IMG/VR virus record: IMGVR_UViG_3300023174_002543
Span: 186,001 to 250,000 of that record
DNA: 64,000 nucleotides
Strand: one strand, 5' to 3'
Shown: in pieces, positions 2,949-44,526 of the stretch
Position numbering within the stretch: position 1 is the first letter of the stretch
How the letters are laid out: the number at the start of each line of letters is the position of its first letter
Translations under genes and position numbers: made by a program
The notes under the pieces: generated by a model
Told to the model about the DNA's origin: nothing
Database searches by the model: none
What the model saw: only the letters and a program-made list of their open reading frames with translations

Positions 2949-4894
2949 AGTACTGCCAAATATTCTTTAAATTTATTGTGTCTATCTTGTAGTCCACTTA
3001 GACCGGGATTGATTGCATTGGTTACTTCTTTTGTGTTGCTAAAATTACTAACATTGGGTCTAACTTGATTCTTCCAGAACCATAGTGCAATTTGAGCACC
3101 TACATCTAGATTACTAGCCAGGTCGGGGTTTTTTACCAATCTATCATCTCCGAATATTTGCTTGCTTGCTCGGGTATAATTGTCACGTCCAGTCAACTGA
3201 ATAAAGCCACGACCTTTAAATAGTTCTCCGTCGCCTTTTACTTTGTTACCTAATTGTCTTGCCTTGCGCGGAGCTTCATATTTGGCAAATCTTTTTTTAT
3301 TGCCCACTTCCTTCATCTTACCAAAGTCCCAACTCTCATGCCGAGTCTGAGCCATGAATTGTGCCAGTTCTACTCCATTGAGTCCTGCGGCTTTAGCAGC
3401 AGTTTGTAGTGCAGCTTCAGCATCACTATTGTCACTTAATAATGTTACACCTTTTTCTTCTTCTTTGTCATCACGTGAAAACTTTGGAATCATTGATGTA
3501 AGTTTATCTTTAAATGAAGTTGTTGGTTGTGCAACTGGTTGTGCAACTTTAGTAGGCTCTTGCTTAAGAGTAGGCTTTACAGTAGCGGGCATTTTACTAA
3601 TAGGTTTAGAATAATCAGGTACTATAACTTTTTGTCCTATTTCTAACTTAGTATTACGACCCATCTTGTTGAGTTTGTATATCTCTAATGGATTTACATT
3701 GTTTTGTCTTGCTATACTGTAAACGGTATCTCCGGGTTCAACTATTTGTTGAACCATTTGAGGAGCCTTTGCATTAGCACCCATTGCCATCGCACCTGCC
3801 ATAGCACCTGTTGCTAGTGCAGATTTCCAATCTTCTTCTAACTCATTTTCTGTTACACCTTGCTTACTTTCATTCATACCCTCTGCACCATAATGAGCAA
3901 TTTTACCTGCTTTGTGCATGTTTTTTACTTGTTTGAATACTTTATCTAAATCATCAGTAACACGGACTATCCACCCTTGACTAGCGATATATTTAAATGG
4001 ATCACCGATGGGCATTTGTTTAATAGGCTTACTAGGATTTTCACTAAACCATTCACCTGTTGGTAATTGTCTGAAATCGCCAGCATCAAACACAGTTAAG
4101 TAAGTTTTACGACTACGCATTGCTGGCAAATCTTTTTGGTCAAAATAAACAATAGGTTGACCGTTTTGCGTAAACTCTACATAGCGTGTTTCATGTGCAT
4201 TGCCTGTAGCGTACAGTGCTGTTCTACGCGGATCACCGGCAAACAATCCTTTAGTAGTGTTAGTTTTAAGATTTTTGTTTTTCCAATAACTATCGTCACC
4301 TGTATCTAAACCACTCTGACTCCAATCATCCGTATGCTTGTATGCTTTGAGGCCAGACACAAAATCTGTGACAGGTTTAGAATCAATTCGTGTTACTGTT
4401 GCACCTTCCGCCACACCTTGTTTTAATCTACTCAATTCATATATAACTAAATCACCATTATCTGCACGAAAAGCCCTATAACCCCAGGCTTTGGCATAAC
4501 GAATCACCAGTCTGTCATACAACTTGGCACGACTCTCAGGATTTGGTTGAGGCTGGTCAGGCTCATAATATATTGTTGGATCAGTTGCTTTAATAGCTGA
4601 AAAACTCAATCTTGAAGGTTTGTATTTTTTGATGTATTTTTGTATAGCGTTTAACACCGTGGCAAAGATACGCTGTGCATCACCTTCGCCTGTGACTTCT
4701 TGGCTGTTGTTTCTATAAAATTCAACCTGCACTACTTCTTTGCCTTCGTCATCTTGTTGATTGTTGAACATGATGCTTAAATTTGTTCCGTCGGGCAATT
4801 TTGTGTTTAAATCAACGTCACCGTAATCGCTTTTTTCCCATTTGCCTTTATAGGGTTGGTCAAAGGCCTCTGTTATAAATTCACTTGCTCTCAT
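2945..4894 (-). CDS. Multi-domain virion-associated protein: repeated domain, unknown domain, LysM and GH19 lysozyme/chitinase
   Basis: Start moved to MRASEFITEA (ATGA overlap with the sod stop). LysM: VEPGDTVYSIARQNNV. GH19: AQTRHES, GRGFIQLTGRDNY, INPG. Linkers QGVAEG and QGVTEN. Confidence 0.8.
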   Translation of the reverse strand: MRASEFITEAFDQPYKGKWEKSDYGDVDLNTKLPDGTNLSIMFNNQQDDEGKEVVQVEFYRNNSQEVTGEGDAQRIFATVLNAIQKYIKKYKPSRLSFSAIKATDPTIYYEPDQPQPNPESRAKLYDRLVIRYAKAWGYRAFRADNGDLVIYELSRLKQGVAEGATVTRIDSKPVTDFVSGLKAYKHTDDWSQSGLDTGDDSYWKNKNLKTNTTKGLFAGDPRRTALYATGNAHETRYVEFTQNGQPIVYFDQKDLPAMRSRKTYLTVFDAGDFRQLPTGEWFSENPSKPIKQMPIGDPFKYIASQGWIVRVTDDLDKVFKQVKNMHKAGKIAHYGAEGMNESKQGVTENELEEDWKSALATGAMAGAMAMGANAKAPQMVQQIVEPGDTVYSIARQNNVNPLEIYKLNKMGRNTKLEIGQKVIVPDYSKPISKMPATVKPTLKQEPTKVAQPVAQPTTSFKDKLTSMIPKFSRDDKEEEKGVTLLSDNSDAEAALQTAAKAAGLNGVELAQFMAQTRHESWDFGKMKEVGNKKRFAKYEAPRKARQLGNKVKGDGELFKGRGFIQLTGRDNYTRASKQIFGDDRLVKNPDLASNLDVGAQIALWFWKNQVRPNVSNFSNTKEVTNAINPGLSGLQDRHNKFKEYLAVL

Positions 4895-5445
4895 AGACTC
4901 TTGCCCCAACGTGTATTGATGACATTCCAGTTTATGATCTTCCATTGTTCACGCAAATACTTCTTTTTATCGGCTCCGTAGTCAAGTGTCCAGGCATGTT
5001 CCCACCAATCAATTAATAACAATATATCATTACGAACTTCATGGTTTTTGATTGTTTTGAGTTTGCCATCACTTGCTAGATAAATCCAACCACTACCCTG
5101 TATAGTCATAGCCTCAGTCTCAATACTATCTTTGAGACCGTCGTAACTTCCATAATGCTTGTTTATAAATCCAAGCATAGGGCCGTTGGGCTTGTTATTG
5201 TTGCGTACCTCACGGAACTGAGGGAACAGAGTATTGTGTAGGAAAGCACCTGCGTAGTTAAATTCTTTATCACCTTCACCCTTGTTATATCTATCAGCAT
5301 ATCCATGTGCTAGTTTACCAAAGTGCAAGTCTAAGGCACCGGCACTGAATACAGGCTTTACATCCTTATATTCAAAATTTAACGGAATGATTTCTATATC
5401 TTGAGGCTTGTTTTTATCCTCAAGAAGGCTGATTATATCTCGCAT
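4891..5445 (-). CDS. sod: Fe/Mn superoxide dismutase
   Basis: LHFGK..HGY, FLHN, QGSGW and DWWEHAW motifs; the H/H/D/H metal ligands are present. Confidence 0.9.
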   Translation of the reverse strand: MRDIISLLEDKNKPQDIEIIPLNFEYKDVKPVFSAGALDLHFGKLAHGYADRYNKGEGDKEFNYAGAFLHNTLFPQFREVRNNNKPNGPMLGFINKHYGSYDGLKDSIETEAMTIQGSGWIYLASDGKLKTIKNHEVRNDILLLIDWWEHAWTLDYGADKKKYLREQWKIINWNVINTRWGKSL

Positions 5446-22408: not shown

Positions 22409-24340
22409 TTATTTAGATTCTTTTACCTCTGCATCAACCACTGTTGACTCATCAACGGGTTTTGCAGTTTCTTCTGTAGTAGCAGTTGGATTTGCTGCCT
22501 CTTCAGCCTTCTTCTTGGCTTCTTCTTCCTCATACTTAAACTTAGTAATTGGACCGATAGCCTCGTATAACTTAGGAATACTATCTTGGATTGCTTTAGG
22601 ATCATCACCTTCCATAGCAGTTTCAACAGCCTTAATAGCTTCGTCTGCTTTGTTGCGTTCTTCTTCGGTGACCTTATCCTTATAAGCCTCAAAGTCTTTC
22701 TTAAAGCCAAACAATGTACCTTCAGCACTATTACGTGCTTGTACTAATTCAACATGTTTCTTATCGGCTTCAGCATTCAACTCACCATCTTTAACCATTT
22801 GTTGAATTTCTGCTTCACTTAATCCTGAATTAGCCTTGATAGTGATTTTGTTCTCTTTACCAGTACCTTTGTCCTTAGCGGACACTTTGAGAATACCGTT
22901 AGCATCAATATCTAATGTAACTTCAATCTGTGGTTGACCACGTGGTGCTGGTGGAATGTCACCCAAACTAAACTCACCCAATACTTTATTATATTGGAAT
23001 AGTTCACGTTCACCTTGACCTACTTTAATAGTAACTGCCGGCTGATTGTCATCCGCAGTACTAAAAGTTTGTGAATGTTTAGTTGGGATAGTTGTATTCT
23101 TGTTAATCAATTTAGTGAATACACCACCGACTGTTTCGATACCAAGACTCAATGGAGTAACGTCAAGTAATAGAACGTCACTACGGCCACCACTCAATAC
23201 ATCACCCTGAATAGCAGCACCTGCGGCAACTGCTTCGTCTGGGTTAACATCTTTGCGTGGTGCCTTGCCGAATAATGATTCAACAACTTCTTGCACCTTA
23301 GGCATACGTGTCATACCGCCAACTAAGATAACTTCATCAATGTCACCTGCACTAACATTAGCATCTTGCATAGCCTGACGACATGGAGCCAAACTACGTT
23401 GGATTAACTCGTCAACCAATTGTTCTAATTTAGAACGTGATAGTTTAACGTTCATGTGCTTAGGACCATTTGCATCGGCTGTAATATATGGCAAGTTAAC
23501 ATCTGTTTGTGCTGAACTTGATAATTCAATCTTAGCCTTTTCTGCGGCTTCTTTTAGTCGTTGTAGTGCCAACACATCTTTACTTAAATCAACTCCGTTG
23601 TCTTTCTTAAACTCATCAATTAAGAAATCCATAATACGTTGGTCAAAGTCTTCACCACCTAAGAATGTATCACCGTTCGTAGACAATACTTCGATTTGTT
23701 TGTCACCGTCAACATCTGCTAATTCAATGATAGATACGTCAAATGTACCACCACCTAAGTCATAGACTGCAATTTTACGGTCACGTTTTTCTTGTTTATC
23801 AACACCATATGCTAGTGCGGCCGCTGTTGGCTCGTTAATAATACGCAATACTTCTAAGCCTGCAATTTTACCTGCATCCTTAGTTGCTTGACGTTGACTA
23901 TCGTTAAAGTAAGCAGGAACTGTAATAACTGCTTGGGTTACATCATGTCCAAGATAGTCTTCGGCAGTCTTTTTCATCTTGCGTAGTACTTCGGCACTAA
24001 TTTGCGGGGGTGCTAACTTTTCATCATTAACTTGTACCCATGCATCACCGTTATCGTTCTGTACGATTTTGTATGGCATTAGGTCAATATCTTTTTGCAC
24101 AGCCTGTTCATTAAACTTACGTCCAATTAAACGTTTGCTTGCATAGATTGTGTTCTTTGGATTTGTAACTGCTTGGCGTTTGGCGCTTGCACCAACCAAG
24201 ATTTCATCGTTTGCGTAGGCAACGATTGAGGGTGTAGTTCTAGCACCTTCTGAATTTTCAATTACTTTGGGGATTCCGTTTTCGATAACGGCTACGCATG
24301 AATTTGTGGTACCCAAATCGATACCGATGACTTTGCTCAT
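22409..24340 (-). CDS. dnaK: Hsp70 chaperone DnaK
   Basis: Full length; [25 protein letters not shown] and [13 protein letters not shown] motifs. Confidence 0.98.
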
Positions 24341-30424: not shown

Positions 30425-31687
30425 TTATATGCTACTATTTAAATCTTGTACAGACAATCGGGAAAGAATTTCTTCTTGGGTATCCAAATCTTCTGGCTTA
30501 GTATGTAAGTCACATGCCGTATACAACCATCCAACACCCCTGCGTCTTCCTGGATTCCCGCAATTTTCACATGTCCTACTTGAAAATCCCTCAGCCATAC
30601 TTACCAAGCCTCTAATGTAGTCATCACCACCATTATAATAAAACCTCAATGTACCAAACTTTTCTTTAATTTGACTTGCAACTACTTGGTGTGGTGCTTC
30701 CGGAACTTGTCTTGGTTGATTTCTTTTAATTTCAAACTCTACGTTCTCATAAGTCTTTTCGTTTGGGCTATCTCCATAAGTAAAATATTTGACTAACCCA
30801 GATTTATCACCCTTCAGTGCCTTAGCCAGCAAACGATTATATTTTAATGCACGGACACGTTGATTACGTTTCCAATCAATATGATGTTGTATCTGATTAC
30901 ACAATAAATCTAATATGTTGTACCATCCTGTGCCACATTCAAAACCCCAACACATTGCGGTTTCTTGCATAGGTTTATATCTATCTCTAAAAATTTTAGG
31001 ATACTTTTTAACTAAGTCATCATCTAGTTTAGAATTCATTGGTTCTTCCTTCTTTTAACCTCATGTATTACGCGCCTTACATGGTCTACTATTTTGTTGT
31101 AATCTTCGGATCCTTCTACAGGCCAAGTTTTTTCTCTGAAATATTCACCCTCTGCGATAACTCCGATAAATGCCATAATCACACACATGAAAATCATCAT
31201 TGGTTGTGTATACACTATACCAAAAAATATACCTACTGTACTAACCGTATACAGTAGGTAAAATCCATATTGTATGAATTTATCTTTTTTATCCTTCATA
31301 CCTTATCTCTTGGTAGGCACTGATAACTTCGGTTAGCATTGATTGATTGTTTCATACGAACAACCATACATTCTTTTTTAGTATTAAAATAATCAACCAC
31401 GTCATATTCAACTTTAGCAATACCATTTATATTAGTCATAAAAATTGCAACTAATACCCACTCATTCATACAACACGTCCTAATCCTAACCAAATTAACT
31501 GCTCAAGTTCAGTTTGATAGTCCTGTCCAATCCTACGTTTTTGATAAATGGACTCTAGTATTTCTTTACCATCTCCATAGTCCGTGACTCCCGATCCACG
31601 TGACTCCAATTCTTCAATCAAATCATCGGTATCAAAGTCACCCAAGTCAACGTCAACTTCTACTTCTGTGTAAATTGTTTTATACAT
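30425..31687 (-). CDS. Four hypothetical proteins (30425-31039, 31036-31299, 31296-31469, 31466-31687)
   Basis: Coupled ORFs; the first has the QIKEKFG.LRFY and CENCG motifs common in phages. Confidence 0.6.
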
Positions 31688-33024
31688 TATTTGTCATCCC
31701 TAAATCTAACAAAGCGAGGGAAACGTAAACTATACGTACCATCACGATTTTGTGTAATCACATCGCACATGATTTCAGCAGTACGACCAATGATGTGATT
31801 AGTGTTAGCCCAAAACTCATCACGATCATCATCGCTAAAACCACTTCCCACATTGACGGAGATTTCTTTTCCGTCATCGAATCCCGAACAAACCAGTGCA
31901 CCAAGTCGTCCTTCATTTCTTCCAGTACCTTCTTCGACACCTATGACCTCCAAGTCTACAGTAATGACAGGCTTCCACTTCATCCAGTCTGTACTACGCT
32001 TACAGACATATGGCGCATCAACATTCTTAATCATAATGCCCTCGAATCCAAGATTCACTTGATCCTTAGCATATCGTTCTAATTGATTTTTACCTGCCGC
32101 TGTATCCAAATCAACCATGATATGTGGTAACAATTCAACATTAGGCATGTCATCAATGATACTACGCATATCTTCTAAAATGTTAATGCGTTTGTGTAGT
32201 TGTGCATTCCAATGACCTTCACGGAAAGCATCAATTGGTAGAATGTCAAATACATTAAACACACTATCCTCTGCTTGTACATCAGTCTTGCGGCGCGCCT
32301 GACGCATAAGTTCTTGGAATGTATTACCAATCACTTCACCATCCATCACAAAGCCCATGCTCAAGTTACTACTTGCGGCTTTATGTGTAAGTTTTACAAA
32401 GTTCTCACGTATTTGATTTTCAATATGACCAAAGTTGTCAAACTGTTTACCATTGCGACTGAAACAAATAGTGACAATATTGCCATCCTCATCAGGGATA
32501 GCTGTCAACAACACACGAACGCCGTCAAGTTTAGGCTCAAGACGTTTGATGCCTTTCATCTCTGGACGACCTTCACTATTAGTTGCTAGTTGACAACCAA
32601 AGATTGGTACTTCATATTCAGTACCTTTACAAATCTTATTGATTGTCTTATCACTGATACCTGCTCGTAAGTCTCTACGCAACACTGGTGCTAAGAATGT
32701 GTTCCATTCAATACTATCAAACCGCTCAGACATATTTTGTACAGCATCACGTGCCGCATGACCTGTCAATTTACGTTGGCTAAGTTGATACATCAACATA
32801 TTGAATTCATCCCAGGGATTTTCTGCGTCAACAATACCTACAGTATCGGGTACTTGACGAATACCAAATGTAACATAGGGATTATAACAGGCGTTGGTAA
32901 AACCCAAGAAAATTTGACTATTGCGACTGCCTAGGACACTTGCCTCAAGAGCCTGCAAAATTACATCTTCTTTATGAAGGCGACTATCGCTCTCGTTTAA
33001 TTTATTAATCCAACTTGCACTCAT
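31687..33024 (-). CDS. ATP-dependent DNA ligase
   Basis: EPKLDGVR, DGE, FD, EGIMIK, W.K.KP and SLRFPRF motifs. Confidence 0.95.
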   Translation of the reverse strand: MSASWINKLNESDSRLHKEDVILQALEASVLGSRNSQIFLGFTNACYNPYVTFGIRQVPDTVGIVDAENPWDEFNMLMYQLSQRKLTGHAARDAVQNMSERFDSIEWNTFLAPVLRRDLRAGISDKTINKICKGTEYEVPIFGCQLATNSEGRPEMKGIKRLEPKLDGVRVLLTAIPDEDGNIVTICFSRNGKQFDNFGHIENQIRENFVKLTHKAASSNLSMGFVMDGEVIGNTFQELMRQARRKTDVQAEDSVFNVFDILPIDAFREGHWNAQLHKRINILEDMRSIIDDMPNVELLPHIMVDLDTAAGKNQLERYAKDQVNLGFEGIMIKNVDAPYVCKRSTDWMKWKPVITVDLEVIGVEEGTGRNEGRLGALVCSGFDDGKEISVNVGSGFSDDDRDEFWANTNHIIGRTAEIMCDVITQNRDGTYSLRFPRFVRFRDDK

Positions 33025-33033
33025 TTATATCTC

Positions 33034-33210
33034 CTATGCCATTTTGTCAATGTTACTACCTTTGTCAAGGTCTTGCGGTCTAATTTGTTCTAATTCACGT
33101 TGTCTATCTTTGATAACTTTAATCTGTTGTTGTTTAATTGTTTCTTGATGGGCAAGTTTCTGTAACTCAATTTTATGAGCCATTGCTGGATTAATTCTAT
33201 CAACCTTCAT
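33034..33210 (-). CDS. 58-aa protein MKVDRINP...KGSNIDKMA (not in the ORF track)
   Basis: AGGAG RBS; manual translation. Confidence 0.55.
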   Translation of the reverse strand: MKVDRINPAMAHKIELQKLAHQETIKQQQIKVIKDRQRELEQIRPQDLDKGSNIDKMA

Positions 33211-33260
33211 CTATGTCACTCCTATGTTATAGTCAGTGTCAAAATAAAGCAGATAGGTTT

Positions 33261-34055
33261 TCATTTTGGCATCATCAATGCATTGAAGTTTGAAGGAACA
33301 ACAATAGTCTGTACTTGACCGTTCTTGATACCTTCACTGATATTCAACATGGCTTGTGCTTGCATGAATGCAATACTAGCACCTGAGTTATTAGCCAATG
33401 CTGCCATTCTGCGACTTTCTGCTTCGGCAGTTTTTACTTCAACTTCCTTTTGCTTGAGTTCGTTTTTGCTACGAACCAATGCATTTGCAGATTCAACCAC
33501 TGTATCGCTAGGCAACACATTACGAATCATCACTTGACTGATTGTGATACTGCCATCTAGTTTTTCTTCGGCAAGATTGCGAGTAATCTCATCCTTGATG
33601 TAGTTCTCCATGTCAGTGCGATTGTCTGCCATGTCCAGTGCTTCGTGCTTGCGGGCTGATTTGTAAATAGCATTGCGGGCATTTTGCACAATGTAGTTAT
33701 ACATCACATAAGTGTCACCACGAAACTCAGCGTGAAAACTCTTGTTCTTGGTTGCGTACAACTCACTTACTTGTTGTGGGTTGATGTTGTAAACAACTAC
33801 AGCATCAAAGTCTTTCATTGTAGAATTGTCTTTAGCAACAGGAGTCATGTTCTCCAATGTCACATTAACGTCCTTGATAGGGAATGTAAGCACATCACCG
33901 ATCAATGTTTGATTGAATGATCCGGGCATCAATTCACCTGGCTGAACCTGTCTATCAAAGCCAACTCGCACGCCAACTTCACCTGTTTCAATACGTGTAC
34001 AACCTGTTGCCAAAACTGCAGCAGCAAGAATAGAGAGGGTGAAAATACGTTTCAT
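33261..34055 (-). CDS. SPFH/band-7 lipoprotein
   Basis: Lipobox ATGC, RIETGEVGV, coiled-coil C-terminus. Confidence 0.85.
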   Translation of the reverse strand: MKRIFTLSILAAAVLATGCTRIETGEVGVRVGFDRQVQPGELMPGSFNQTLIGDVLTFPIKDVNVTLENMTPVAKDNSTMKDFDAVVVYNINPQQVSELYATKNKSFHAEFRGDTYVMYNYIVQNARNAIYKSARKHEALDMADNRTDMENYIKDEITRNLAEEKLDGSITISQVMIRNVLPSDTVVESANALVRSKNELKQKEVEVKTAEAESRRMAALANNSGASIAFMQAQAMLNISEGIKNGQVQTIVVPSNFNALMMPK

Positions 34056-34064
34056 TATGTTTCC

Positions 34065-35055
34065 TTAAAATAAAATAACAATCAACATTAACAGCACTAT
34101 TGCTGTCAATGCACATAGTATACTATAACCAAGCAATTTTGTCAATGCCCATTTGTCTTTCCCGGACAAATCCCTGTAGCCTTTTATGCCAAAATAAAAC
34201 ACGAAAAACACAAACAAAAATGCCAATATAATTTTAATCATTCTTCAACTCCAAATGTATTTTTAAAATCTTTAACGCAAAACAATATACTGTTAGCATT
34301 TTGTTTAGTAACCTCTGATTGAAGTTCATGTTGAAAAGCCACGCATTGACTAAAAGTATCATGCTTGCCCAATTCACCTAGAGGGAAAGACTGCTCAAAG
34401 GGTTCAAACAAAACTAAAATCAATGACCACATGATATTACCAGCTACTGTTGTAAAAGACTTTCAATCCTAAAAATATTTCTGCTTTGGCTTCAATACAG
34501 AATTTTAAATCATCGTGATAATAAATGTTATCTGCAGGATTACCAAAAAAGAAACCTGTTGTATTAGGCAAATGTCTTTTCTTAATGTCTTTTTCAAGCC
34601 TACTAATATCTTCCCATGATAATTCAAGTTCAATACCATTGAAGGTTTTAGTACCACCTTTTTCACGATATAGATTTTCCATCCAGCCATGTAGGTTAGG
34701 ATGCTTACGCCAATATGCTAATTCACGCGGTTTGGTTATAGTGCTTGAATCTTTTTCCCAATCATAGTTTTCATAATATTCTTTCATCTTGTCGGCTTTA
34801 GAGGCGACATAAGCATACATATCTAAACCCATATTAATCTCCAAAAACTAAAATTATAATTGCTAAAAATAATGACCAGCCAAGATGACCTAGCATCAAC
34901 AACATGAGTACACCAATCCAAGCCATTTATTTTGCCTGCTCAATCGCAATTGCTTTTGTTTTCTCAATACTGTTGTCCACCATTTTAGCAATACCGCTAA
35001 AACCTACGGTAGCGACTACAATACCAAAAACTGTACCAATGATAAAAGTCTTCAT
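34065..35055 (-). CDS. Cluster of small early ORFs (34065-34241 membrane, 34238-34432, 34437-34832, 34927-35055)
   Basis: 34437-34832 has the MGLDMY...YWRK...Y.SSW phage motif; others are from manual translation. Confidence 0.55.
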
Positions 35056-35108
35056 ACGAACTCCTGTGTGTAAAGATGATTATAGTATACTATATTGCGT
35101 AATATATG

Positions 35109-35762
35109 TCAAGTTAATTTGACCCGACTCAATTGGGTACTATTGTCACGGTGTGCTTTAACAGTACCATTGACAATGATATTTTGTCCAACTGGGATAC
35201 TTTCTTTGTAAGAAAAAAACACTACCTCATCTGCGGGTGTAACTCCGGTAATAAAATTCACATTATATCTATGTGAGAAAATAGATTTTAGTACTTCCAA
35301 TTTAATTAGTGTAGCCTTTAATCCGGGCTTGCTAATGTAGCCACCTTGTGCAAATTTAATACGTTGGTCAACATTATCCCGTGCAACCGCACGTACATAA
35401 GAATTGGGCAAACTTGCAATAACTGCTAGGTCAAAGTTTTCGGTGATAACATCACGATTGCTAATCAACATAACATTATTATCAAAGTCATTAAGTTTGA
35501 TACCTTTAAGAACCTTGAATGTAAGACCTTGATAATATTGACGAACCTTTTTACCTTGCTCACGGTTTTCATCAGTAATTTGGGTAGTATCTTCCATCAA
35601 TGATACTATGATTTCACGATTAGCACGTGTACCATTCGTAAGTTGGTCGCTAGTTAATTCATTTAATTTTATATAACTGCCGTTAACTTGTTGAGCCTGA
35701 CATGCTGCGGCCCAAACATCATTGGCATTATAATTCAGTACAGGTTTTTTATGTACAGCCAT
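35109..35762 (-). CDS. Hypothetical protein with a C-terminal OB-fold-like region
   Basis: GTVKAH...TQLSRVK ending. Confidence 0.6.
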   Translation of the reverse strand: MAVHKKPVLNYNANDVWAAACQAQQVNGSYIKLNELTSDQLTNGTRANREIIVSLMEDTTQITDENREQGKKVRQYYQGLTFKVLKGIKLNDFDNNVMLISNRDVITENFDLAVIASLPNSYVRAVARDNVDQRIKFAQGGYISKPGLKATLIKLEVLKSIFSHRYNVNFITGVTPADEVVFFSYKESIPVGQNIIVNGTVKAHRDNSTQLSRVKLT

Positions 35763-36238
35763 TATACAGTCTCCACTTGTTTCAATGCAAACTCTAAACT
35801 AACCAATTCAGTCATGTCGCCGCTAGTAACATACCAAACATCGTCACGCATGATGTACATAAACTCACAACCCATATCTTGGTAGTATTCAACTGCCTCA
35901 GAAAATTTAGTAAATGTTTTATAGCCTTGGTCTTCTTCGCCGCGGTCACGACCATAGAATGTAGACCAACCTTTAGATTCTGCTTCCTCATACAAAGCAA
36001 TAAGGGCATCAACGTCGGGCGACTTGTCGTTGATTTCAAATTTGCTAAATGGGTGTTGTTCGCCGATATTAGGACGCAAACTAGAAAGATTACCAAGTGC
36101 TACCAGATAATTTGCTTTGGGACTATCATAATGCTTTTGCAAAATTTCACCATTGTGTTCCAAGTAACCGTCCCAATGACAGTATACCATTTTGCAGTTA
36201 TCACCATGCATCACACCAATTGCTGAACGTGTAGCCAT
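35762..36238 (-). CDS. Conserved early phage protein
   Basis: MATRS.IG...YCHWDGY...G..L motif. Confidence 0.7.
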   Translation of the reverse strand: MATRSAIGVMHGDNCKMVYCHWDGYLEHNGEILQKHYDSPKANYLVALGNLSSLRPNIGEQHPFSKFEINDKSPDVDALIALYEEAESKGWSTFYGRDRGEEDQGYKTFTKFSEAVEYYQDMGCEFMYIMRDDVWYVTSGDMTELVSLEFALKQVETV

Positions 36239-36245
36239 TTGCAAA

Positions 36246-38752
36246 CTCCTTTAATTAACTGATTAAGACTCTATTATATACCCAAAGTGATTTATTGTCA
36301 ACCTTTTTCGACCACGGTCAAATCGTTGACCCACTCTAGTTCCATCAATGCATCTTCCTCATTATCAAACCCTACCGCATCATGTCCTGATGCATAGTGT
36401 TTAATGTAGAATTTTCCGTTGCCCGGGCTTGCCTCAGTATCGATACCAACTTCACCGACACCTTCAACTATTCTAACAATGAAATCCATGTTATACTCCT
36501 ACTCTATACGTATTATAATTACGGATTTTGCTTTGGCGATTAGTATGGCTTTCGTTGAAACGGATTTCATAGCCACGTTCACGCAGGGCAGTAATCAATA
36601 CTGACAAATCACAATCCTCTTCCAAGAAAGCATTCTCACCTTTTTGATAACTATAAGTAGAGATTTTATCAGCGATACCAAGTTTCACCAATTTGGACTT
36701 AGCAATACGTGCCCAAGCATGACCTGGATCTGCAAAAACTTTGATAGAGATTTTTTTAGTCATTTGTACTCCTTAGACCAAATCAACTTGTACTTGTTTG
36801 CCACGGAAAGTGTCACCGAGACCTGTTGGAATCGTTTCGTTTTTGCGTTTGGCTTCATAACGCAAATAAGACAATTTAATCATTGCGTCCCAGCAAAGTG
36901 AGCGGGCGTTAACTGTAGCAAATTGCTCGGTCATTTGCTGGATTGTCATATAAAAACCAACGTCATTTTCACTACCGTCACCCTTGAAAATGATACGGAA
37001 TTTTTGTGAATTTTTGAAACCGTCAATGATAGTTTTTGTACGCATTTTGTAGTCCTTTTCTTTACTGTCTAAGATTCTATTATATACCCAAATCCATTTA
37101 TTGTCAAGCCATTTTGTATGATTTTATGAATTCAGGACCAACATCTAGACTAACAAAAGTATCACCTTGCATACCTTGCTCAGAATAAGAAACATCAGTA
37201 CCTAATTCTAGTCTAGAAAGTAATACTTTTACATTACTTAAAAATTCTTTATCCGTATAGATGAGGCCGTAAACATTCACATTCCAAGTATCAGGGCTAA
37301 AGTGTACCCTTAGTTCACCAAACTCCCAATCATCAGATGTATACGAAAGTTCTAATCCGGTAACTAGTACTGTTTTAGCCAGGTTAGACCAATAACCAGA
37401 ACCATCTGTACTCAACTTTGTATTAACTTTAATCATTAATTGCTCCAAAAAGATTCGCTAGAGGGTGAACAGAAATACGGGGTATCATACCGTTCCTTGT
37501 ATGTCTTACCAGTCATTAAATTTTGCTTAATTTCATAAGTTTGGAACATCTCAACAATGAAGCCCAACTTGCGTTTTGATTCAGCAACAGCCTCGATATA
37601 GTCTTTAGTAGAAGGGGCAAAATCTTCTTTTTTAATAAGACGTTTACCTTCTTTGACACGTTTGTCAGATTTGTAAATTTCAAGTGTGTAGCAAAGCATT
37701 TGTGACATTTGTGTTCCTTTAATCAATCAATACAAGTATTATATACCCAAATCCATTTATTGTCAACCTCAGGCCGCTTTTCTAAAGTAATTATAGGGCA
37801 ATCCCTGAGTAAAGCAAAAGTATTCATAATCACCGTTAGCACCCTCAGCATCCATCAACCAAGCAATCACACGTTCACGATTGGTACCAGTGTGCATGAG
37901 GTTAGTAATAGTATCCTCAAACTTAGCAATAGCCGCTGCCTCAGCAATTTTACGTTGGGCATCCTCTTGTTCAATAGCAGTAGCCAATGAAGCAAACTCT
38001 GCTTCAAATACCTCAAGGGTCCAACCAGAAGTGTCAACACCGCGAGGGCGAACGCCATAAGCATCCTTGTACATATCCCAATATGTGCATTGGGCTTGTT
38101 CCAACTCAGACATTTCTTCCCAAGATTTGAATTCGTTTGACATTTTGTACTCCTTTAATCAACTAACTAAGACTCTATTATATACCCAAATCCATTTATT
38201 GTCAAGTTTTGGATTTCTCAGCACCGACGATTTCCCAATGATTTCCGTCACATTTGACAAAAATCTTACGACCGAAAACTGTCACAAAACCATACTCACC
38301 GTCTTGGTAGACGTTGACCGGATCAGGGATAATGGTCACCGTGCGGGGTGTCTCACAGTAATCCCAACGCCTAGTAGGAAGTTTGTTTTTGAAATACATG
38401 TAATTCTGACTACCTGTAACAAAAAGTTTTACCTTCATAACTAGCTCCTTTAATCAATCAATACAAGTATTATATACCCAAACCGATTTATTGTCAAATT
38501 TTGGGTTGTTGTTATTCTGCAACAGGAGCAAACATTTTTGCGCCCTCAACCATAAATATCCTATACGCTTGCATGGTCTTTTCGCTATAGACCATTCGAC
38601 CGTCTTTTTGAATGTCAGCTAAAAGTTCTAATAGACCTAGACCCAAAAATTCTTGTTCTTTTTTAAGTTGGGCTATTGCAGTTTCAATTTTCATAACAAC
38701 TCCTTTAATCAATCAATACATGTATTATATGCCCAAAATGATTTATTGTCAA
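36246..38752 (-). repeat. Six dispersed ~55-bp direct repeats, each a consensus sigma70 promoter plus RBS
   Basis: Copies at about 36246-36301, 37053-37107, 37715-37766, 38150-38205, 38445-38497 and 38700-38752. Consensus TTGACAATAAAT..(T)TTTGGG(T/C)ATATAATA...AAAGGA, with a 17-nt spacer in all. Confidence 0.92.
36298..38694 (-). CDS. Eight small early ORFs between the repeats (36298-36489, 36491-36763, 36773-37045, 37104-37436, 37436-37708, 37769-38143, 38202-38438, 38512-38694)
   Basis: Each follows a repeat RBS or is coupled to the previous ORF; 36491-36763 has DPGHAW...LEEDCD. Confidence 0.7.
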
Positions 38753-38759
38753 GCCGTGG

Positions 38760-38784
38760 AAAAGCCCCGACTAGCAGGGCTTTT
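38760..38784 (-). terminator. Intrinsic terminator upstream of the early cassette array
   Basis: AAAAGCCC-N9-GGGCTTTT. Confidence 0.65.
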
Positions 38785-38797
38785 GAAACTAAAAGTA

Positions 38798-39070
38798 TTA
38801 CTTTTTAGTTGTAGTACTTTGATTTACAAAACCATACATTTTTTCTGCGGTTTCTAAAATCTGCTCTAATCCAGGAAACTCTGGTGCGGCAACTGAATTA
38901 ACAAGTTGTCCTGTTGCAGGATCTTTCTTTGCAGTTAGTTCCCAACCAGCAAATTTCATGCTGTATTCTTTTTCTACAAAATCTTTAGCCATTCCAAGAA
39001 CATCGCTGCGAATTTCGTATCCGTTTTTACTGAATTTTACTTCAGGCATTTTTGGTGTAAAATCTGACAT
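38798..39070 (-). CDS. Conserved hypothetical protein
   Basis: KNGYEIR..L.MAK motif; own TTGACT-N17-TATAAT and AGGAG. Confidence 0.65.
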   Translation of the reverse strand: MSDFTPKMPEVKFSKNGYEIRSDVLGMAKDFVEKEYSMKFAGWELTAKKDPATGQLVNSVAAPEFPGLEQILETAEKMYGFVNQSTTTKK

Positions 39071-39215
39071 ATTGTCTCCTGTGTTTGTGTGTAAATTATA
39101 TAGCCATTAAGATTGAAAGTCAATCTAGTTTGGGTTTATCTACCCTTTAAACTAGAATCGTTTCTATGTTTTTTAATAGCTTGGATGGCTTCTAAGATGC
39201 TTAGAATAAATTTTT

Positions 39216-39401
39216 TCATAGTATACCTCTAGATATTTTCATGTTGTATTCAACTGTAAGACGTTCCACATCACCTGAATGTTGTGGGTTACGCTCAGTA
39301 ATATATTGTTCTAAACTAGAACCATATGAAGTGTCGTTTGAAATTTTGGCAACTTTATAACCGGCATAAGCCAATGCTACAATAAGTAGAGTTATTAACA
39401 T
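39216..39401 (-). CDS. Small protein (DUF3563-like)
   Basis: LE.YI..RNPQ...DVE.L motif. Confidence 0.5.
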   Translation of the reverse strand: MLITLLIVALAYAGYKVAKISNDTSYGSSLEQYITERNPQHSGDVERLTVEYNMKISRGIL

Positions 39402-39402
39402 A

Positions 39403-39690
39403 TTACTTTGTTTTCTTGCTTGCAGCTTTAGCAGGTGCTGTTGGTGCGAATTTATCTAAACCATATGCTGAAATAAGGTCTTTAACAAAGTCTTTCTTTG
39501 TAACAAGTGTACCAAAATTCAACATTGTTTCAATGTTTGTGTCTAATACTGATTTAGTGTATTCTGTTTGGGCTTGAACGAATTTAGTCATCGTTTCTGC
39601 TAGACCTTCGTGTTTAACGAAAGCTGAAACGAATTGTAGTTTACCCTTTTGTACCGCATCAACGGCATCGTGTGTGAAAGATTGAATCAT
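39403..39690 (-). CDS. Phasin-like amphipathic helical protein
   Basis: D.VQ..K..FV..FV.......FV.AQT.YTK pattern; AGGAG RBS. Confidence 0.5.
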   Translation of the reverse strand: MIQSFTHDAVDAVQKGKLQFVSAFVKHEGLAETMTKFVQAQTEYTKSVLDTNIETMLNFGTLVTKKDFVKDLISAYGLDKFAPTAPAKAASKKTK

Positions 39691-39962
39691 AATTTTCTCC
39701 TATGTGTGTGTATGATTTTGGGTTTTTATACAGAACCCATAACTGCACAAGTATTTATGCCTGTGAATTTTTATTATAACATACTTCTCTGTATTTGTGT
39801 AGAGCCTTGACTCTAATTAGAGCCAATCGTATTGTTACATAATCTGATAACGGTTCATCATCAATTTCATGATGGACTATCTTCGGGCGATCAAACCCTC
39901 TTTGTAAGTCTAGTTCGTCTGGTCCGGGCGGACCGTTACCTTCATCATCAATGTCAAATATT

Positions 39963-40172
39963 TTATTTGGATGCCTTACTATCTTTAGCAGGTTTCTTTG
40001 CGTCCTTGGCAGTGCTAGAACTTTTACTGGGACTTTTGGTGGTGTCCACCTTTGCATCCTTACTGTGGTCTTTTTTCTTTGCCAATTTAACACCCGAATC
40101 AGTTACGGTTGGTTCATTTGCATATGCTACGAATGTGAATGTTGCTAGAATGATTGCGATAAGTTGTTTCAT
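39963..40172 (-). CDS. Small secreted Lys-rich protein
   Basis: Signal peptide ending AYA; low-complexity K/D/S tail. Confidence 0.6.
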   Translation of the reverse strand: MKQLIAIILATFTFVAYANEPTVTDSGVKLAKKKDHSKDAKVDTTKSPSKSSSTAKDAKKPAKDSKASK

Positions 40173-42204: not shown

Positions 42205-43534
42205 TTACAATCTCCTTGAGTTCTCTTACACGATATGCAACAATCACCGGACCATTACGCCATGCCCTGCCACCATCAATCTTTTTATTCCACATATCAC
42301 ATCTAGCATTAGCCTCTTCTAATGTATCACAGAGGTTGTGTATCTCCCAACGCTCAGGTACTGTTTTGAATTTTAACAATCTATCTATTGCATAATTAGA
42401 CATTGTTATGATCCTTTGTTAGTTCTGCTAGAAATAAAAAATGTTCGTATGCCTTTTTAACTGCAGGTACAGACAACAACTTGTCTGCCTCTATTTGCAT
42501 TACTTTAACTGCATCTTCGGCTACTTCTCTAGCACTAGGCCATTCTAACATACGTGCATCTTCACCGAATTCTTTTACTAGATTTTCCCAAGCCTCTTGT
42601 TGCCCTTTAGTAATAGGTGCTCGTTTAGGGCGCATATCACTGGCCTTTCTTATTGCCTCACTAATCTTATCTTCTGCTACACGACCTGCGGCAATCATCG
42701 GTGCATATGCAGGATTTACATTATAACGTGTGCTTTGCCCGCCTGGATAGCAAATTACCAAATGACTACCTTTAGGAAACGAATCCATAAGTGTCTGGTC
42801 ATACTCATGCACAGGAACATACCTGCGCCCAACTTTTTTGTAAAAAATTTCCTTCATAGCCTAAATTTCTTTAGATATTCTTTAACAAAACTCAAATCTT
42901 CACAATCATATGAGGGTTTTCTAGGGGCCACTGGGATATCACTTAAATCGTCTAAGCCATAATTCTCAGCATAGTATTCAACTAGACTATCAATCACTGC
43001 GGCAAGCATACGCTCATCCATCATCTTTAATGCGTCAAGGTTAACTCTAATTTCTTTATCATTCATGTTACTCTCCTAGTTTATCCCAAATATATTCTGA
43101 TTCTTTTACGTATGCTACTGGGTTAATCCAACCTCTGTCAATACACTCAGCTAAAATCAAACCATATTCACGTGGGCAACTTTTAGAAACTTCAAAACCT
43201 GCACGTGGTGTAATTGTTATTCCGTTCTTGATGTACCAACCAGGATCACCTATTTTGATAGTTTTAATTTTCTGTTTTGGTTCAGTGATTTTAATCATTT
43301 GTAAGCCTTAACATCTTTATGTTTAACTCGAATAAAGTTATAAACTTTATCTTCAAATTTGATAGGTAAATCTAAGTGTACACTAATATATGGACCTTCA
43401 ATTTCATTAAGTTGCGTATCATTACCTACTGTACCTACAAATGGAATACCATTCCATTTACCTATGATACGATCACCTATGTTCCATTTAGCCTTGTATC
43501 TGTTTAGTGAAAAATAATCTGCTAAACTTGGCAT
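42197..43534 (-). CDS. Five small hypothetical proteins (42197-42403, 42396-42857, 42854-43066, 43068-43298, 43295-43534)
   Basis: Coupled co-oriented ORFs. Confidence 0.55.
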
Positions 43535-44526
43535 AGTACCCCCTTGTATGGATTGTTTAACCACTTGCTATATGTCTCGGCATTCTGTGATATCTTCTCA
43601 AGTTCGTACTTACCACAGAATTTCATCAAGTGAATGCCTACTTGAGGTGTAGTTTCAAGCCTAACACCAGTTTTAATAGCATTGTCAACATTAGTCTTTA
43701 CCCAATCAGGCTGACATGTCAAGTCAATCAATTGACGATTGCGCTCATAGTCGTCCTTAACACGATGCTCGACACCATCATGGTCAACCCAGCGTTGCAG
43801 CATCATGTTATTCCAATTAAAACCTTGCTTAGTACGATCCTCGTATGCTTCCATCAAGCCGATTTTGTTCTTAGTACCTTTCTCACGCACACCTGGATAT
43901 GCCGAAAACACATTGTCGCTTGAATCACCGCGCATACATTTTTTGAAAAGCAACCATTGAGGATCTTCTAAGAGTTTGGGCTCTTTAGTTTTCTTATCAA
44001 CGATTAGTTTTCCTTTATCATCAAAATATCCATCTGGGGTGATAAGTTGGTTAGTGATTCCATTGTACTGATGTACTGTATCTGATATAAGCTGGATATA
44101 ATCGCCATCAGAACTAATAATAAAAATTTTATCATTTGGGTGTAAGTGTATAAATCTTGCAATTAAATCGTCAGCCTCTGCTTGCGGTTCACGCAATACG
44201 CTAACGTTCGTTTTCTCTTTTAGAAATGTAGTGAACTTTTCATAAGTATCCCAAAACATTTCCGATTCTTCTTTTTCTGCCTCAGTCAATGCCTGATTAG
44301 CAACTGCTCGTTGTGCCTTGTAGGGCTTGTATAGGTCTTTGCGAAACGACCTACCTTCTAAGCAAAACACAACGTGGTCAATGCCAAATTTGCGTACAAT
44401 CTGATTGACACTCGCAAGTGTCAAGTGTAGTGCCATTCCCACTTTCTCCCACGGGTCACTATTACGTGATGCAACGTGACGGGCACGGAAGAAAGTGTTG
44501 GCAGTGTCGATAAGTGCGTAGTTCAT
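43522..44526 (-). CDS. rnh: T4 RNase H-like 5'-3' exonuclease (FEN family)
   Basis: LID..N, YKA.R, EADD, SSDGDY.QL, GD.SDNV and N..LIDL motifs. Confidence 0.9.
   Translation of the reverse strand: MNYALIDTANTFFRARHVASRNSDPWEKVGMALHLTLASVNQIVRKFGIDHVVFCLEGRSFRKDLYKPYKAQRAVANQALTEAEKEESEMFWDTYEKFTTFLKEKTNVSVLREPQAEADDLIARFIHLHPNDKIFIISSDGDYIQLISDTVHQYNGITNQLITPDGYFDDKGKLIVDKKTKEPKLLEDPQWLLFKKCMRGDSSDNVFSAYPGVREKGTKNKIGLMEAYEDRTKQGFNWNNMMLQRWVDHDGVEHRVKDDYERNRQLIDLTCQPDWVKTNVDNAIKTGVRLETTPQVGIHLMKFCGKYELEKISQNAETYSKWLNNPYKGVLCQV

What the first reader, a model, noticed from the sequence alone, without database searches (positions are those of the whole stretch)
35084..38784. Array of promoter-delimited early gene cassettes in which the -35 box supplies the upstream stop codon
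SEEN: six ~55-bp repeats in 2.5 kb, conserved even in the spacer (ATAAAT..TTTGGG), each driving one to three tiny unrelated ORFs and insulated upstream by a terminator. The TGA inside TTGACA is the stop codon of the ORFs ending at 35109, 36298, 37104 and 38202. Two leader subtypes (...GAGTCTTA and ...TGTATTGATTGA) are interspersed. KNOWN: repeated early-promoter elements mediate gene shuffling in T4-like phages. INFERENCE: a recombination-driven cassette array for host-takeover or anti-defence genes, in which any captured ORF gains a promoter, an RBS and often a stop. The conserved spacer may also be an operator for coordinated shut-off.
Basis: partly seen in the sequence, partly recalled or inferred. 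Interest (0 to 1): 0.62.

Follow-up and report, generated by a model that had tools for sequence, protein, structure and literature searches.

The report
Shuffled early-promoter gene cassettes in jumbo phage
A giant freshwater phage carries a row of near-identical strong promoters, each in front of a few small unknown genes, and comparison with relatives shows that these promoter-plus-gene units are swapped by recombination inside the promoters, much as already described for T4-like phages.

Summary
The repeats are real: six perfect TTGACA-N17-TATAAT promoters on the minus strand (window 36273-38752). They share the spacer, the leader and the Shine-Dalgarno sequence, and none is expected by chance. 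They drive 1-3 unrelated ORFs each. The window lies in a 367-kb uncultured jumbo phage with a T4-type capsid, related to PA5oct. This genome holds 13 copies of the family in two clusters, and three complete relatives hold 5-21.

Among 42 syntenic relatives there are 32 different gene orders. The flanks are conserved and the array is scrambled. Homology blocks start and stop inside the repeats. One cassette (r11) is 96-97% identical to relatives while its neighbour is 70-86%, and the switch falls 4 nt after a -10 box. Another cassette (x06) sits 141 kb away in this genome behind a related promoter with the same leader type.

So the recombination-driven cassette idea holds, but it matches the known PeSL elements of T4-like phages.

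- Not confirmed: a terminator before each repeat (only 1 of 6).
- The -35 TGA does end four ORFs, but no more often than frame chance allows (about 38% against 33%).
- The cassette functions and the operator idea remain untested.

Verdict: a stem-loop-poor variant of a known kind, of moderate interest.

The parts
38760..38785 (-). Intrinsic terminator-like hairpin (AAAAGCCCUG-CUAGU-CGGGGCUUUU) ending the upstream r09 unit. It is the only clear terminator in the array.
   Evidence: RNA folds (10-bp stem). Read directly.
38692..38757 (-). Repeat P6: -35 at 38752-38747, -10 at 38729-38724, type B leader with the TGATTGATTAA three-frame stop, SD, and the ATG of r10.
38512..38694 (-). r10, 60-aa ORFan. 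Replaced by the unrelated x06 in most close relatives.
38436..38502 (-). Repeat P5: -35 at 38497, type B leader, ATG of r11.
38202..38438 (-). r11, 78-aa ORFan. Its stop is the TGA of the P4 -35. It is 95-97% nt identical to relatives, and only 6 relatives exist in 5.8 billion protein clusters.
38141..38210 (-). Repeat P4: -35 at 38205, type A leader, ATG of r12. The divergence switch (recombination breakpoint) falls 4 nt after its -10.
37769..38143 (-). r12, 124 aa, all-helical. Member of a large unannotated metagenomic family. Its stop lies 2 nt before the P3 -35.
37706..37771 (-). Repeat P3: -35 at 37766, type B leader, ATG of r13.
37104..37708 (-). r13 (37436-37708, 90 aa) and r14 (37104-37436, 110 aa). 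r14 stops on the TGA of the P2 -35. r14 is absent from all relatives examined.
37043..37112 (-). Repeat P2: -35 at 37107, type A leader, ATG of r15.
36298..37045 (-). r15 (36773-37045), r16 (36491-36763) and r17 (36298-36489). r17 stops on the TGA of the P1 -35. In relatives, r15 and r16 occur singly behind repeats in other orders.
36236..36306 (-). Repeat P1: -35 at 36301, type A leader, ATG of r18.
35109..36238 (-). r18 (35762-36238, 158 aa, phrog_1987) and r19 (35109-35762, 217 aa). r19 is the conserved downstream anchor of the variable region, and its stop is the TGA of the next -35.
35084..35112 (-). Promoter-like site TTGACA-N17-TATACT in front of the 42-aa r20. Not a member of the repeat family.
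38798..39123 (-). Conserved upstream anchor: promoter TTGACT-N17-TATAAT (39123-39095) and r09 (38798-39070, 90 aa).

Best explanation
The six repeats are host-sigma70 (early-type) promoters fused to a conserved 5' leader and ribosome-binding site. Each heads a small cassette of 1-3 ORFan genes in a hyperplastic region of a 367-kb jumbo phage that has a T4-type capsid and is related to PA5oct.

Because about 60-65 bp of near-identical sequence recurs at the head of each cassette, here and at other loci in the genome, the phage's general homologous recombination system crosses over inside the repeats. The genome encodes a RecA/UvsX-type recombinase. These crossovers delete, replace, reorder and translocate promoter+ORF units within and between related genomes. 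Every moved ORF arrives with a promoter, a leader and an RBS.

Shown here: the repeats and their statistics; variable cassette content between conserved flanks; breakpoints in or at the repeats; mosaic repeats; cassette translocation.

Inferred, not shown: that the promoters fire early; that recombination is homologous and not site-specific; that circles form; that the small proteins serve host takeover or counter-defence.

The -35 TGA stop is a by-product of ORFs being packed right up against the promoter. The conserved spacer most likely reflects a sequence-specific functional constraint. The same 26 of 29 core positions are kept across genomes whose backbone is only about 78% identical, while 3 positions vary freely.
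For: - Repeats: 6 of 6 perfect matches with 0 expected; 13 copies in the genome in two clusters; 5, 14 and 21 copies in three complete relatives; more than 119 viral contigs carry the motif.
- Conservation starts about 5 nt before the -35 and ends at the SD. The 29-nt core has 91% mean pairwise identity, against 27% for the flanks.
- Phage type: Gp23 capsid E=1.9e-99. Closest isolates are Phosso, Vibrio 2.275.O and PA5oct at 69-72%. PA5oct uses the host RNA polymerase and has TTGAC/TATAATA promoters at mapped start sites (PMC7318152).
- Synteny: 32 architectures among 42 loci. r01-r09 and r19-ligase are conserved; the array between them is scrambled.
- Breakpoints: homology ends at the P6 leader/ATG, resumes 9 nt before the P5 -35, and resumes 3 nt before the P3 -35.
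- r11 block: 3% divergence against 23% in the neighbouring block. The switch is 4 nt after the P4 -10 (Fisher p=2e-15).
- Mosaics: the spacer triplet stays with the upstream gene, and the same ORF is found behind different leaders.
- x06 is single-copy in each genome. It sits in the array in G001 and at 360 kb in this genome. It is 98% identical in protein and 90% in DNA from 9 nt before the -35 to the stop, while the backbone is 79%.
- x45+x02, x16 and x41 are likewise found behind other promoters in this genome.
- R junctions are homology breakpoints more often than promoter-less junctions (92% against 73%, OR 4.2).
- RecA/UvsX-like gene present; no tyrosine or serine recombinase.
Against: - Two clear breakpoints (r13|r14 and r18|r19) and the right edge of x06 lie at gene junctions with no repeat.
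- Neighbour diversity after promoter junctions is only modestly higher (0.53 against 0.39, p=0.075).
- The breakpoint test is near saturation, and its loci are phylogenetically non-independent.
- All genomes are metagenome assemblies. Logan contigs break at every repeat, so cassette order rests on the original assemblies, and strain chimeras at repeats cannot be fully excluded.
- No circles or junction reads could be examined, because only contigs were available.
- No transcription start or timing data exist for this phage.
Confidence: 0.75

Rival explanations
1. The repeats are simply strong early promoters kept alike by selection for expression. The region's plasticity comes from illegitimate or microhomology-mediated recombination at any gene boundary, and the repeats are bystanders that mark boundaries.
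For: Breakpoints occur at repeat-free junctions (r13|r14, r18|r19, and the x06|orfY edge). Several promoter-less junctions are highly variable (r20, r21, x01, x00, p=0.075). The same core is conserved across diverged genomes with site-specific freedom at only 3 positions, which points to functional constraint.
Against: The divergence switch lies inside the P4 repeat. Replacement events are bounded by repeats on both sides (r10 against x06; r10-r12 against x06). Spacer and leader halves reassort. Translocated units begin exactly at the repeat's left edge. R junctions are enriched as breakpoints.
Confidence: 0.15
2. The conserved spacer and/or leader is a binding site for a phage-encoded factor. 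This could be an operator for coordinated shut-off or activation of this promoter subclass, or a helper for recombination. It would act in addition to promoter function.
For: The spacer is nearly invariant apart from 3 nt in 290 distinct copies, whereas 197 other perfect -35/-10 promoters of the same phages have free spacers. The motif is private to this phage clade, with 1 hit in about 185,000 bacterial species genomes. The family heads only small ORFan cassettes.
Against: No dyad symmetry is evident on reading the core. No candidate regulator was identified. AsiA, MotA and RegB were not detected, but that search had no positive control. Conservation could equally reflect contacts with RNA polymerase or DNA shape.
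Confidence: 0.15
3. An integron-like system: the repeats are sites for a dedicated site-specific recombinase that captures and excises cassettes.
For: The architecture is an array of short cassettes, each bounded by a conserved site, and the cassettes are found at several arrays in the genome.
Against: The 367-kb genome has no tyrosine or serine recombinase, with controls positive. Crossover positions differ between events (left edge, after the -10, at the ATG). There is no inverted-repeat or attC-like structure.
Confidence: 0.03
4. Assembly artefact: the mosaic divergence and variable order arise because metagenome assemblers switched between co-occurring strains at the repeats.
For: Logan contigs from the best-holding samples break at each repeat. 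Related strains co-occur in the same samples.
Against: The same architectures recur in independent samples and contigs (for example L128/L130/L131, L181/L182/L183, L141/L194). The repeats (about 65 nt) are shorter than typical reads. Piece depths in run X1 are similar, 35-56. Even chimeric assembly would require the shared r11 allele to exist in diverged backgrounds.
Confidence: 0.05

Closest known systems
PeSLs (promoter-early stem-loops) of T4-type phages RB49/phi1 (Arbiol et al. 2010, PMC2839356) and of PST/T4 and nt-1/KVP40 (Comeau et al. 2014, PMC4122927)
   Same: A near-perfect sigma70 promoter (TTGACA-N17-TATAAT in RB49/phi1) is fused to an SD and start codon. The upstream gene's stop lies at the element's 5' edge. 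The elements cluster in hyperplastic regions in front of ORFans. Indels, replacements and displacements between related phages are bounded by the elements, and the published crossovers map between the -10 and the SD/ATG. Here the r11|r12 switch lies 4 nt after a -10.
   Different: The defining stem-loop/terminator is missing from 5 of the 6 copies here and from most of the family. The 17-bp spacer and the leader are themselves highly conserved, whereas PeSLs are aligned mainly on the boxes. Conservation spans about 65 bp, against about 100 bp in PeSLs. The host phage is a 367-kb PA5oct/Rak2-like jumbo phage from freshwater, not a member of Tevenvirinae or the Schizo-T-evens. Mini-circles have not been shown here.
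Host-RNAP promoters of jumbo phage PA5oct (Lood et al. 2020, PMC7318152)
   Same: The phage clade is related (capsid 69% identical). Transcription depends on the host RNA polymerase, and conserved TTGAC and TATAATA motifs lie at mapped start sites.
   Different: In the passages read, that paper does not describe a repeat family extending through spacer and leader, a cassette array, or shuffling.
Integron gene-cassette arrays
   Same: Arrays of short single-gene cassettes, each bounded by a conserved recombination site, with different content in different relatives.
   Different: Integron cassettes are promoter-less, carry attC hairpins, and are moved by an IntI tyrosine recombinase. Here each cassette carries its own promoter, there is no attC-like structure, and the genome has no tyrosine or serine recombinase.
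Host-takeover module of Bacillus phage SPO1 and early-gene clusters of T4
   Same: Clusters of very small early genes, each behind a strong host-type promoter with a strong ribosome-binding site.
   Different: They are known as regulatory/functional modules. Recombination at repeated promoters is not their defining feature.

Membership tests
PeSL (promoter-early stem-loop) elements | Consensus sigma70-type early promoter (-35, about 17 nt, -10) | tested here: met
   Six of six copies are TTGACA-N17-TATAAT, matching 12 of 12 positions.
PeSL (promoter-early stem-loop) elements | Stable stem-loop (terminator/attenuator) within or adjacent to the promoter | tested here: not met
   Only P6 has a terminator hairpin. 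The other five have none, with fold z-scores from -2.2 to +0.7. Across the family there is only a weak enrichment of CCAAA/CCCAAA upstream that could pair with the spacer TTTGGG (37 and 12 of 203, against 8 and 1 in the control), with no covariation.
PeSL (promoter-early stem-loop) elements | Shine-Dalgarno and start codon of the downstream gene at the 3' end; stop of the upstream gene at the 5' edge | tested here: met
   AAAGGAG/AAAGGA followed by ATG in all six. 72% of upstream ORFs across the family stop within 8 nt of the -35 or inside it.
PeSL (promoter-early stem-loop) elements | Clustered in hyperplastic regions, in front of ORFans | tested here: met
   Two clusters in the genome. 7 of the 10 array ORFs have no PHROG hit and none has a Pfam hit. 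There are 32 architectures among 42 relatives.
PeSL (promoter-early stem-loop) elements | Insertions, deletions and replacements between related phages bounded by the elements | tested here: met
   Some breakpoints are not at elements, as also reported for PeSLs.
PeSL (promoter-early stem-loop) elements | Formation of mini-circles by recombination between neighbouring elements | not testable with these tools
   Only Logan contigs were available, and they break at the repeats. Joints had 30-45 nt sides and unknown middles.
PeSL (promoter-early stem-loop) elements | Promoter (and terminator) activity shown experimentally | not testable with these tools
   The phage is uncultured. RNA-library contigs cover parts of the array at 90-95% identity but cannot show transcription starts.
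T4-superfamily phage | Gp23-type major capsid protein | tested here: met
   PF07068 E=1.9e-99 at genome 64120-65124. The closest isolates are PA5oct/Rak2-like jumbo phages.
Integron | IntI-type tyrosine recombinase and attC sites | tested here: not met
   PF00589 and PF00239 are absent from the genome, with controls positive. No attC-like hairpins.

The most novel reading that the evidence does not exclude
The nearly invariant spacer and leader of this promoter subfamily are not just a promoter. They would be a dedicated recognition module for a phage-encoded factor that switches the whole ORFan-cassette regulon and/or promotes cassette exchange. That would make a promoter-embedded, integrase-free 'phage integron' in which the repeat supplies the promoter, translational insulation (three-frame stops), the RBS and the recombination site.
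Probability: 0.12. Interest if true: 0.75.

Novelty: new variant of a known kind. Interest (0 to 1): 0.4.

Why it matters
It extends PeSL-type modular shuffling from classical T4-like phages to an abundant, uncultured clade of freshwater jumbo phages, with clean natural examples:
- a cassette with a recombination breakpoint mapped to within a few nucleotides of a -10 box;
- a single-gene cassette translocated 141 kb.

It also shows that the stem-loop is dispensable for this mode of evolution. The arrays mark where these phages keep their fastest-turning-over genes, which are likely host-interaction genes, so they give a way to find candidate takeover or counter-defence proteins in metagenomes. 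The strongly constrained spacer gives a concrete, testable question about promoter recognition or regulation.

Tried and rejected
- Megablast of the region and blastn of one repeat against 50,697 phage records: no match.
- AsiA, RegB and MotA Pfam searches in the genome: no hit, but no control genome rang either, so this is uninformative.
- Read-level search for circles or deletion junctions: only Logan contigs exist for the holding runs, and they break at each repeat. 'Goes back' and 'skips' joints had short sides and unknown middles, so they are best read as other repeat-flanked cassettes. This gives no verdict on circles.
- Rfam scan of 34000-40000: nothing near a gathering score.
- Terminators or stem-loops at each repeat: rejected.
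- Special role for the -35 TGA: not above the 1/3 frame expectation.
- Three-frame stops as a universal property of the family: only 58% of copies close all three frames, and leaders alone do so in 22% against 15% for shuffles. The property is characteristic only of the type B leader.
- Function of the cassette proteins: PHROG and Pfam give unknown or nothing. ESM Atlas gives only viral hypothetical proteins. r12 profile against PDB sequences and an AlphaFold model (pLDDT 87) against PDB folds: no significant match.
- Host-promoter mimicry: the motif is essentially absent from bacterial genomes.
- Integron-like mechanism: no recombinase found.
Full report
**What is there.** All genes in the 64-kb window run on the minus strand, and the GC content is 36.7%. 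Read on that strand, the finding's region holds six copies of a 52-66-nt direct repeat. Each copy is a perfect TTGACA-N17-TATAAT promoter, and all six match TTGACAATAAATNNNTTTGGGYATATAAT with no mismatch, with 0 matches expected in shuffles. The -35 boxes start at 38752, 38497, 38205, 37766, 37107 and 36301.

Downstream of the -10, each copy continues into one of two leader types:
- Type A, AGAGTCTTA...AAAGGAG, at P4, P2 and P1.
- Type B, ACTTGTATTGATTGATTAAAGGAG, at P6, P5 and P3.

Each leader ends in a strong Shine-Dalgarno sequence and an ATG. The six units drive 1, 1, 1, 2, 3 and 2 ORFs of 60-217 aa (r10 to r19). These ORFs have no paralogues in the genome. None has a Pfam hit and only three have a PHROG hit, all of unknown function.

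- The TGA inside TTGACA is the stop of the ORFs ending at 35109, 36298, 37104 and 38202.
- The promoter at 35112-35084 has TATACT and an unrelated spacer, so it is not a family member.
- Across relatives, 70 of 186 independent upstream ORFs (38%) end on that TGA. This is not significantly above the one-third expected if the reading frame is random (p=0.12). Unrelated consensus promoters show 36%, and the window's 4 of 7 gives p=0.17.
- Another 64 of the 186 stop 4-8 nt before the -35. What is real is extreme packing of the ORF end against the promoter, as PeSL figures also show, and the TGA stop follows from it.
- 'Each insulated by a terminator' fails. Only P6 has a terminator hairpin (38785-38760). 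The other five have none.

**Genomic context.** The window is bases 186,001-250,000 of a 367,104-bp IMG/VR virus record that CheckV rates complete. The phage has a Gp23-type capsid gene (E=1.9e-99). Its closest isolates are the jumbo phages Phosso, Vibrio 2.275.O and PA5oct, at 69-72% capsid identity, followed by 121Q-type coliphages at 66%. PA5oct depends on the host RNA polymerase and has TTGAC/TATAATA motifs at mapped start sites (PMC7318152).

The genome carries about 45 consensus sigma70 promoters co-oriented with the genes, many with the extended -35 TTGACAATAAAT. The tight family with the conserved spacer has 13 copies in two clusters: seven on the plus strand at 174.4-183.5 kb, just outside the window, and the six studied here. 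Three complete relatives have 5, 14 and 21 copies with the same spacer variants. More than 119 viral contigs carry the motif. Only one contig among about 185,000 bacterial species genomes does, a 1.9-kb piece of a Lake Erken MAG.

In 290 distinct copies, conservation begins about 5 nt before the -35 and runs to the Shine-Dalgarno sequence, and only 3 spacer positions vary freely. In 197 other perfect promoters from the same phages the spacers are unconstrained. Mean pairwise identity of the 29-nt core is 91%, against 27% for the flanks on either side.

**Comparative test.** The neighbouring ATP-dependent DNA ligase (31687-33024) recovered 224 relatives at 77-95% identity. Forty-two loci cover the syntenic region and show 32 different gene orders. 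The blocks r01-r09 upstream and r19, r20, r21 to the ligase downstream are conserved. Between r09 and r19 the cassettes differ in nearly every lineage:
- Reference: r10>r11>r12>r13 r14>r15 r16 r17>r18.
- 95% relatives: x06>r11>r12>r13 x28.
- Others: x06>r13; x10>x02; x24>r11>r16)x58>r11>x02; and further variants.

At the DNA level, homology with close relatives:
- ends at the P6 leader/ATG, where r10 is replaced by x06;
- resumes 9 nt before the P5 -35;
- resumes 3 nt before the P3 -35 where r11-r12 are missing.

Two other breakpoints lie at gene junctions that carry no repeat: r13|r14 and r18|r19.

Adjacent cassettes have different histories. r11 is 95-97% identical to five relatives (third codon positions about 91%). 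r12 and r13 are 70-86% identical (third positions 57-70%). The switch from about 3% to about 23% divergence falls 4 nt after the P4 -10 box (Fisher p=2e-15). This is the same zone, between the -10 and the SD/ATG, where PeSL mini-circle crossovers were sequenced (PMC2839356).

The repeats are mosaics:
- The spacer triplet tends to stay with the upstream gene. r12-GGA, for example, is followed by B-r13, A-r13 or A-r19.
- The same ORF occurs behind different leaders. This holds for r13, r16, x27, x41 and r11.

**Cassette mobility.** Genes that occupy this array in relatives lie elsewhere in the reference genome, each directly behind another promoter copy:
- x06 at 360 kb;
- x45+x02 at 177.5-178.0 kb;
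- x16 at 333.7 kb;
- x41 at 174.8 kb.

x06 is single-copy in each genome. In G001 (ligase 92% identical) it sits 2.9 kb from the ligase. In the reference it is 141 kb away. It is 98% identical in protein and 90% in DNA from 9 nt before the -35 to the stop codon, while the adjacent backbone is 79% identical. The orthologous downstream gene in G001 lacks it.

Repeat-bearing junctions are homology breakpoints more often than promoter-less ones (92% against 73%, OR 4.2). That test is close to saturation. The architecture-level test is only suggestive (neighbour diversity 0.53 against 0.39, p=0.075). The whole region is hyperplastic, and the repeats are not the only places where it breaks.

**Mechanism.** The genome has no tyrosine or serine recombinase, with controls positive, but it does encode a RecA/UvsX-type protein at 335.6-336.4 kb. 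Crossover points differ between events. I therefore favour general homologous recombination on about 60-65 bp of shared sequence, as proposed for PeSLs, over a site-specific system.

Early timing, promoter activity and circle formation are inferred. The only public runs holding the sequence are kept as contigs that break at each repeat, so no junction evidence could be obtained. One RNA-library contig and one DNA contig do carry the r13-r19 junction of the deletion-type relatives, alongside the reference form in the same lake sample.

Cassette function is unknown. r11 has only six relatives in 5.8 billion clusters. r12 belongs to a family of more than 3,500 unannotated clusters. It folds confidently as a small helical protein with no PDB match.

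**Comparison with the known.** The closest known system is the PeSL of T4-type phages (PMC2839356, PMC4122927). It is a composite of an AT-rich region with the upstream stop, a sigma70 promoter, a stem-loop terminator, an SD and an ATG. PeSLs cluster in hyperplastic regions in front of ORFans and mediate indels, replacements and mini-circles. Every tested feature is met here except the stem-loop, which is missing from 5 of the 6 copies. Across the family there is only a weak, non-covarying CCAAA...TTTGG complementarity around the -35.

The differences are these:
- the nearly invariant spacer and leader;
- the lack of terminators, so read-through from upstream promoters should add up along the array (an inference);
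- a different, much larger phage lineage from freshwater.

I therefore file it as working like a PeSL array, a stem-loop-poor variant, and not as a strict member.

**Verdict.**
- Observation: partly confirmed.
- Interpretation: supported in its core and already known in kind.
- Novelty: a new variant of a known kind.
- Interest: moderate (0.4).
- Most novel reading still open: the constrained spacer/leader is a recognition module for a phage factor, acting in regulation or recombination. I put this at about 0.12.

All sequences used came from the tools. Read laying was given 4,301 letters.

Noticed in passing
Genome G000:C1:174463-183940 (plus strand, just left of the window): A second array of seven family promoters, plus several looser ones, heads small ORFs on the opposite strand and converges on the window's genes. 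It holds homologues of cassettes (x41, x45, x02, x73-75) that sit in the ligase-proximal array in relatives.
   Followed up: partly
window 38715-38705, 38460-38450, 37729-37719 (minus strand): The type B leader contains TGATTGATTAA, which puts stop codons in all three frames at 4-nt spacing just before the Shine-Dalgarno sequence. It occurs in 36 of 290 family copies, against about 0.005 per 36-nt window genome-wide. Five of the six window repeats close all three frames between the -35 and the ATG. It may act as a translational insulator.
   Followed up: partly
window 10138, 10716 and 44561 (minus-strand -35 starts); genome 175244, 182129 and 329899: Six consensus promoters have an ATG exactly 6 nt after the -10 hexamer, opening ORFs of 52-334 aa (for example ORF 43522-44526). 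The offset histogram peaks only at 6. These are probably leaderless mRNAs. Relatives have a matching 'type D' repeat (ACATTTATGAA).
   Followed up: partly
window 38202-38502 (r11 with its promoter): The r11 cassette is 95-97% nt identical (third positions about 91%) across five relatives whose neighbouring genes are 70-86% identical. This looks like a gene-specific sweep, and only six protein relatives of r11 are known.
   Followed up: yes
window 22409-24340 (minus): A phage-encoded DnaK/Hsp70 homologue (643 aa, phrog_22485), about 68% identical to DnaK genes in records labelled Pseudomonas or Acinetobacter phage. Lak megaphages also carry one.
   Followed up: no
window 31687-34055 (minus): An ATP-dependent DNA ligase (445 aa) lies next to an SPFH/Band-7 lipoprotein (264 aa, with a lipobox-like N-terminus).
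   Followed up: no
window 1362-4945 (minus): Two adjacent large proteins (528 and 666 aa) share a phrog_6387/16075 domain. The second ends in an endolysin/chitinase-like domain.
   Followed up: no
genome 157717 and 166849 (plus strand, outside the window): Consensus promoters of the TTGACAATAAAT type sit directly in front of tRNA-like sequences. The window itself has no tRNA.
   Followed up: no
L219 (CAIUKZ010000432.1, 367-395): The only bacterial-genome hit of the extended promoter is a 1.9-kb contig binned into a Lake Erken Bacteroidales MAG. It is probably mis-binned phage DNA and not evidence of the host.
   Followed up: no
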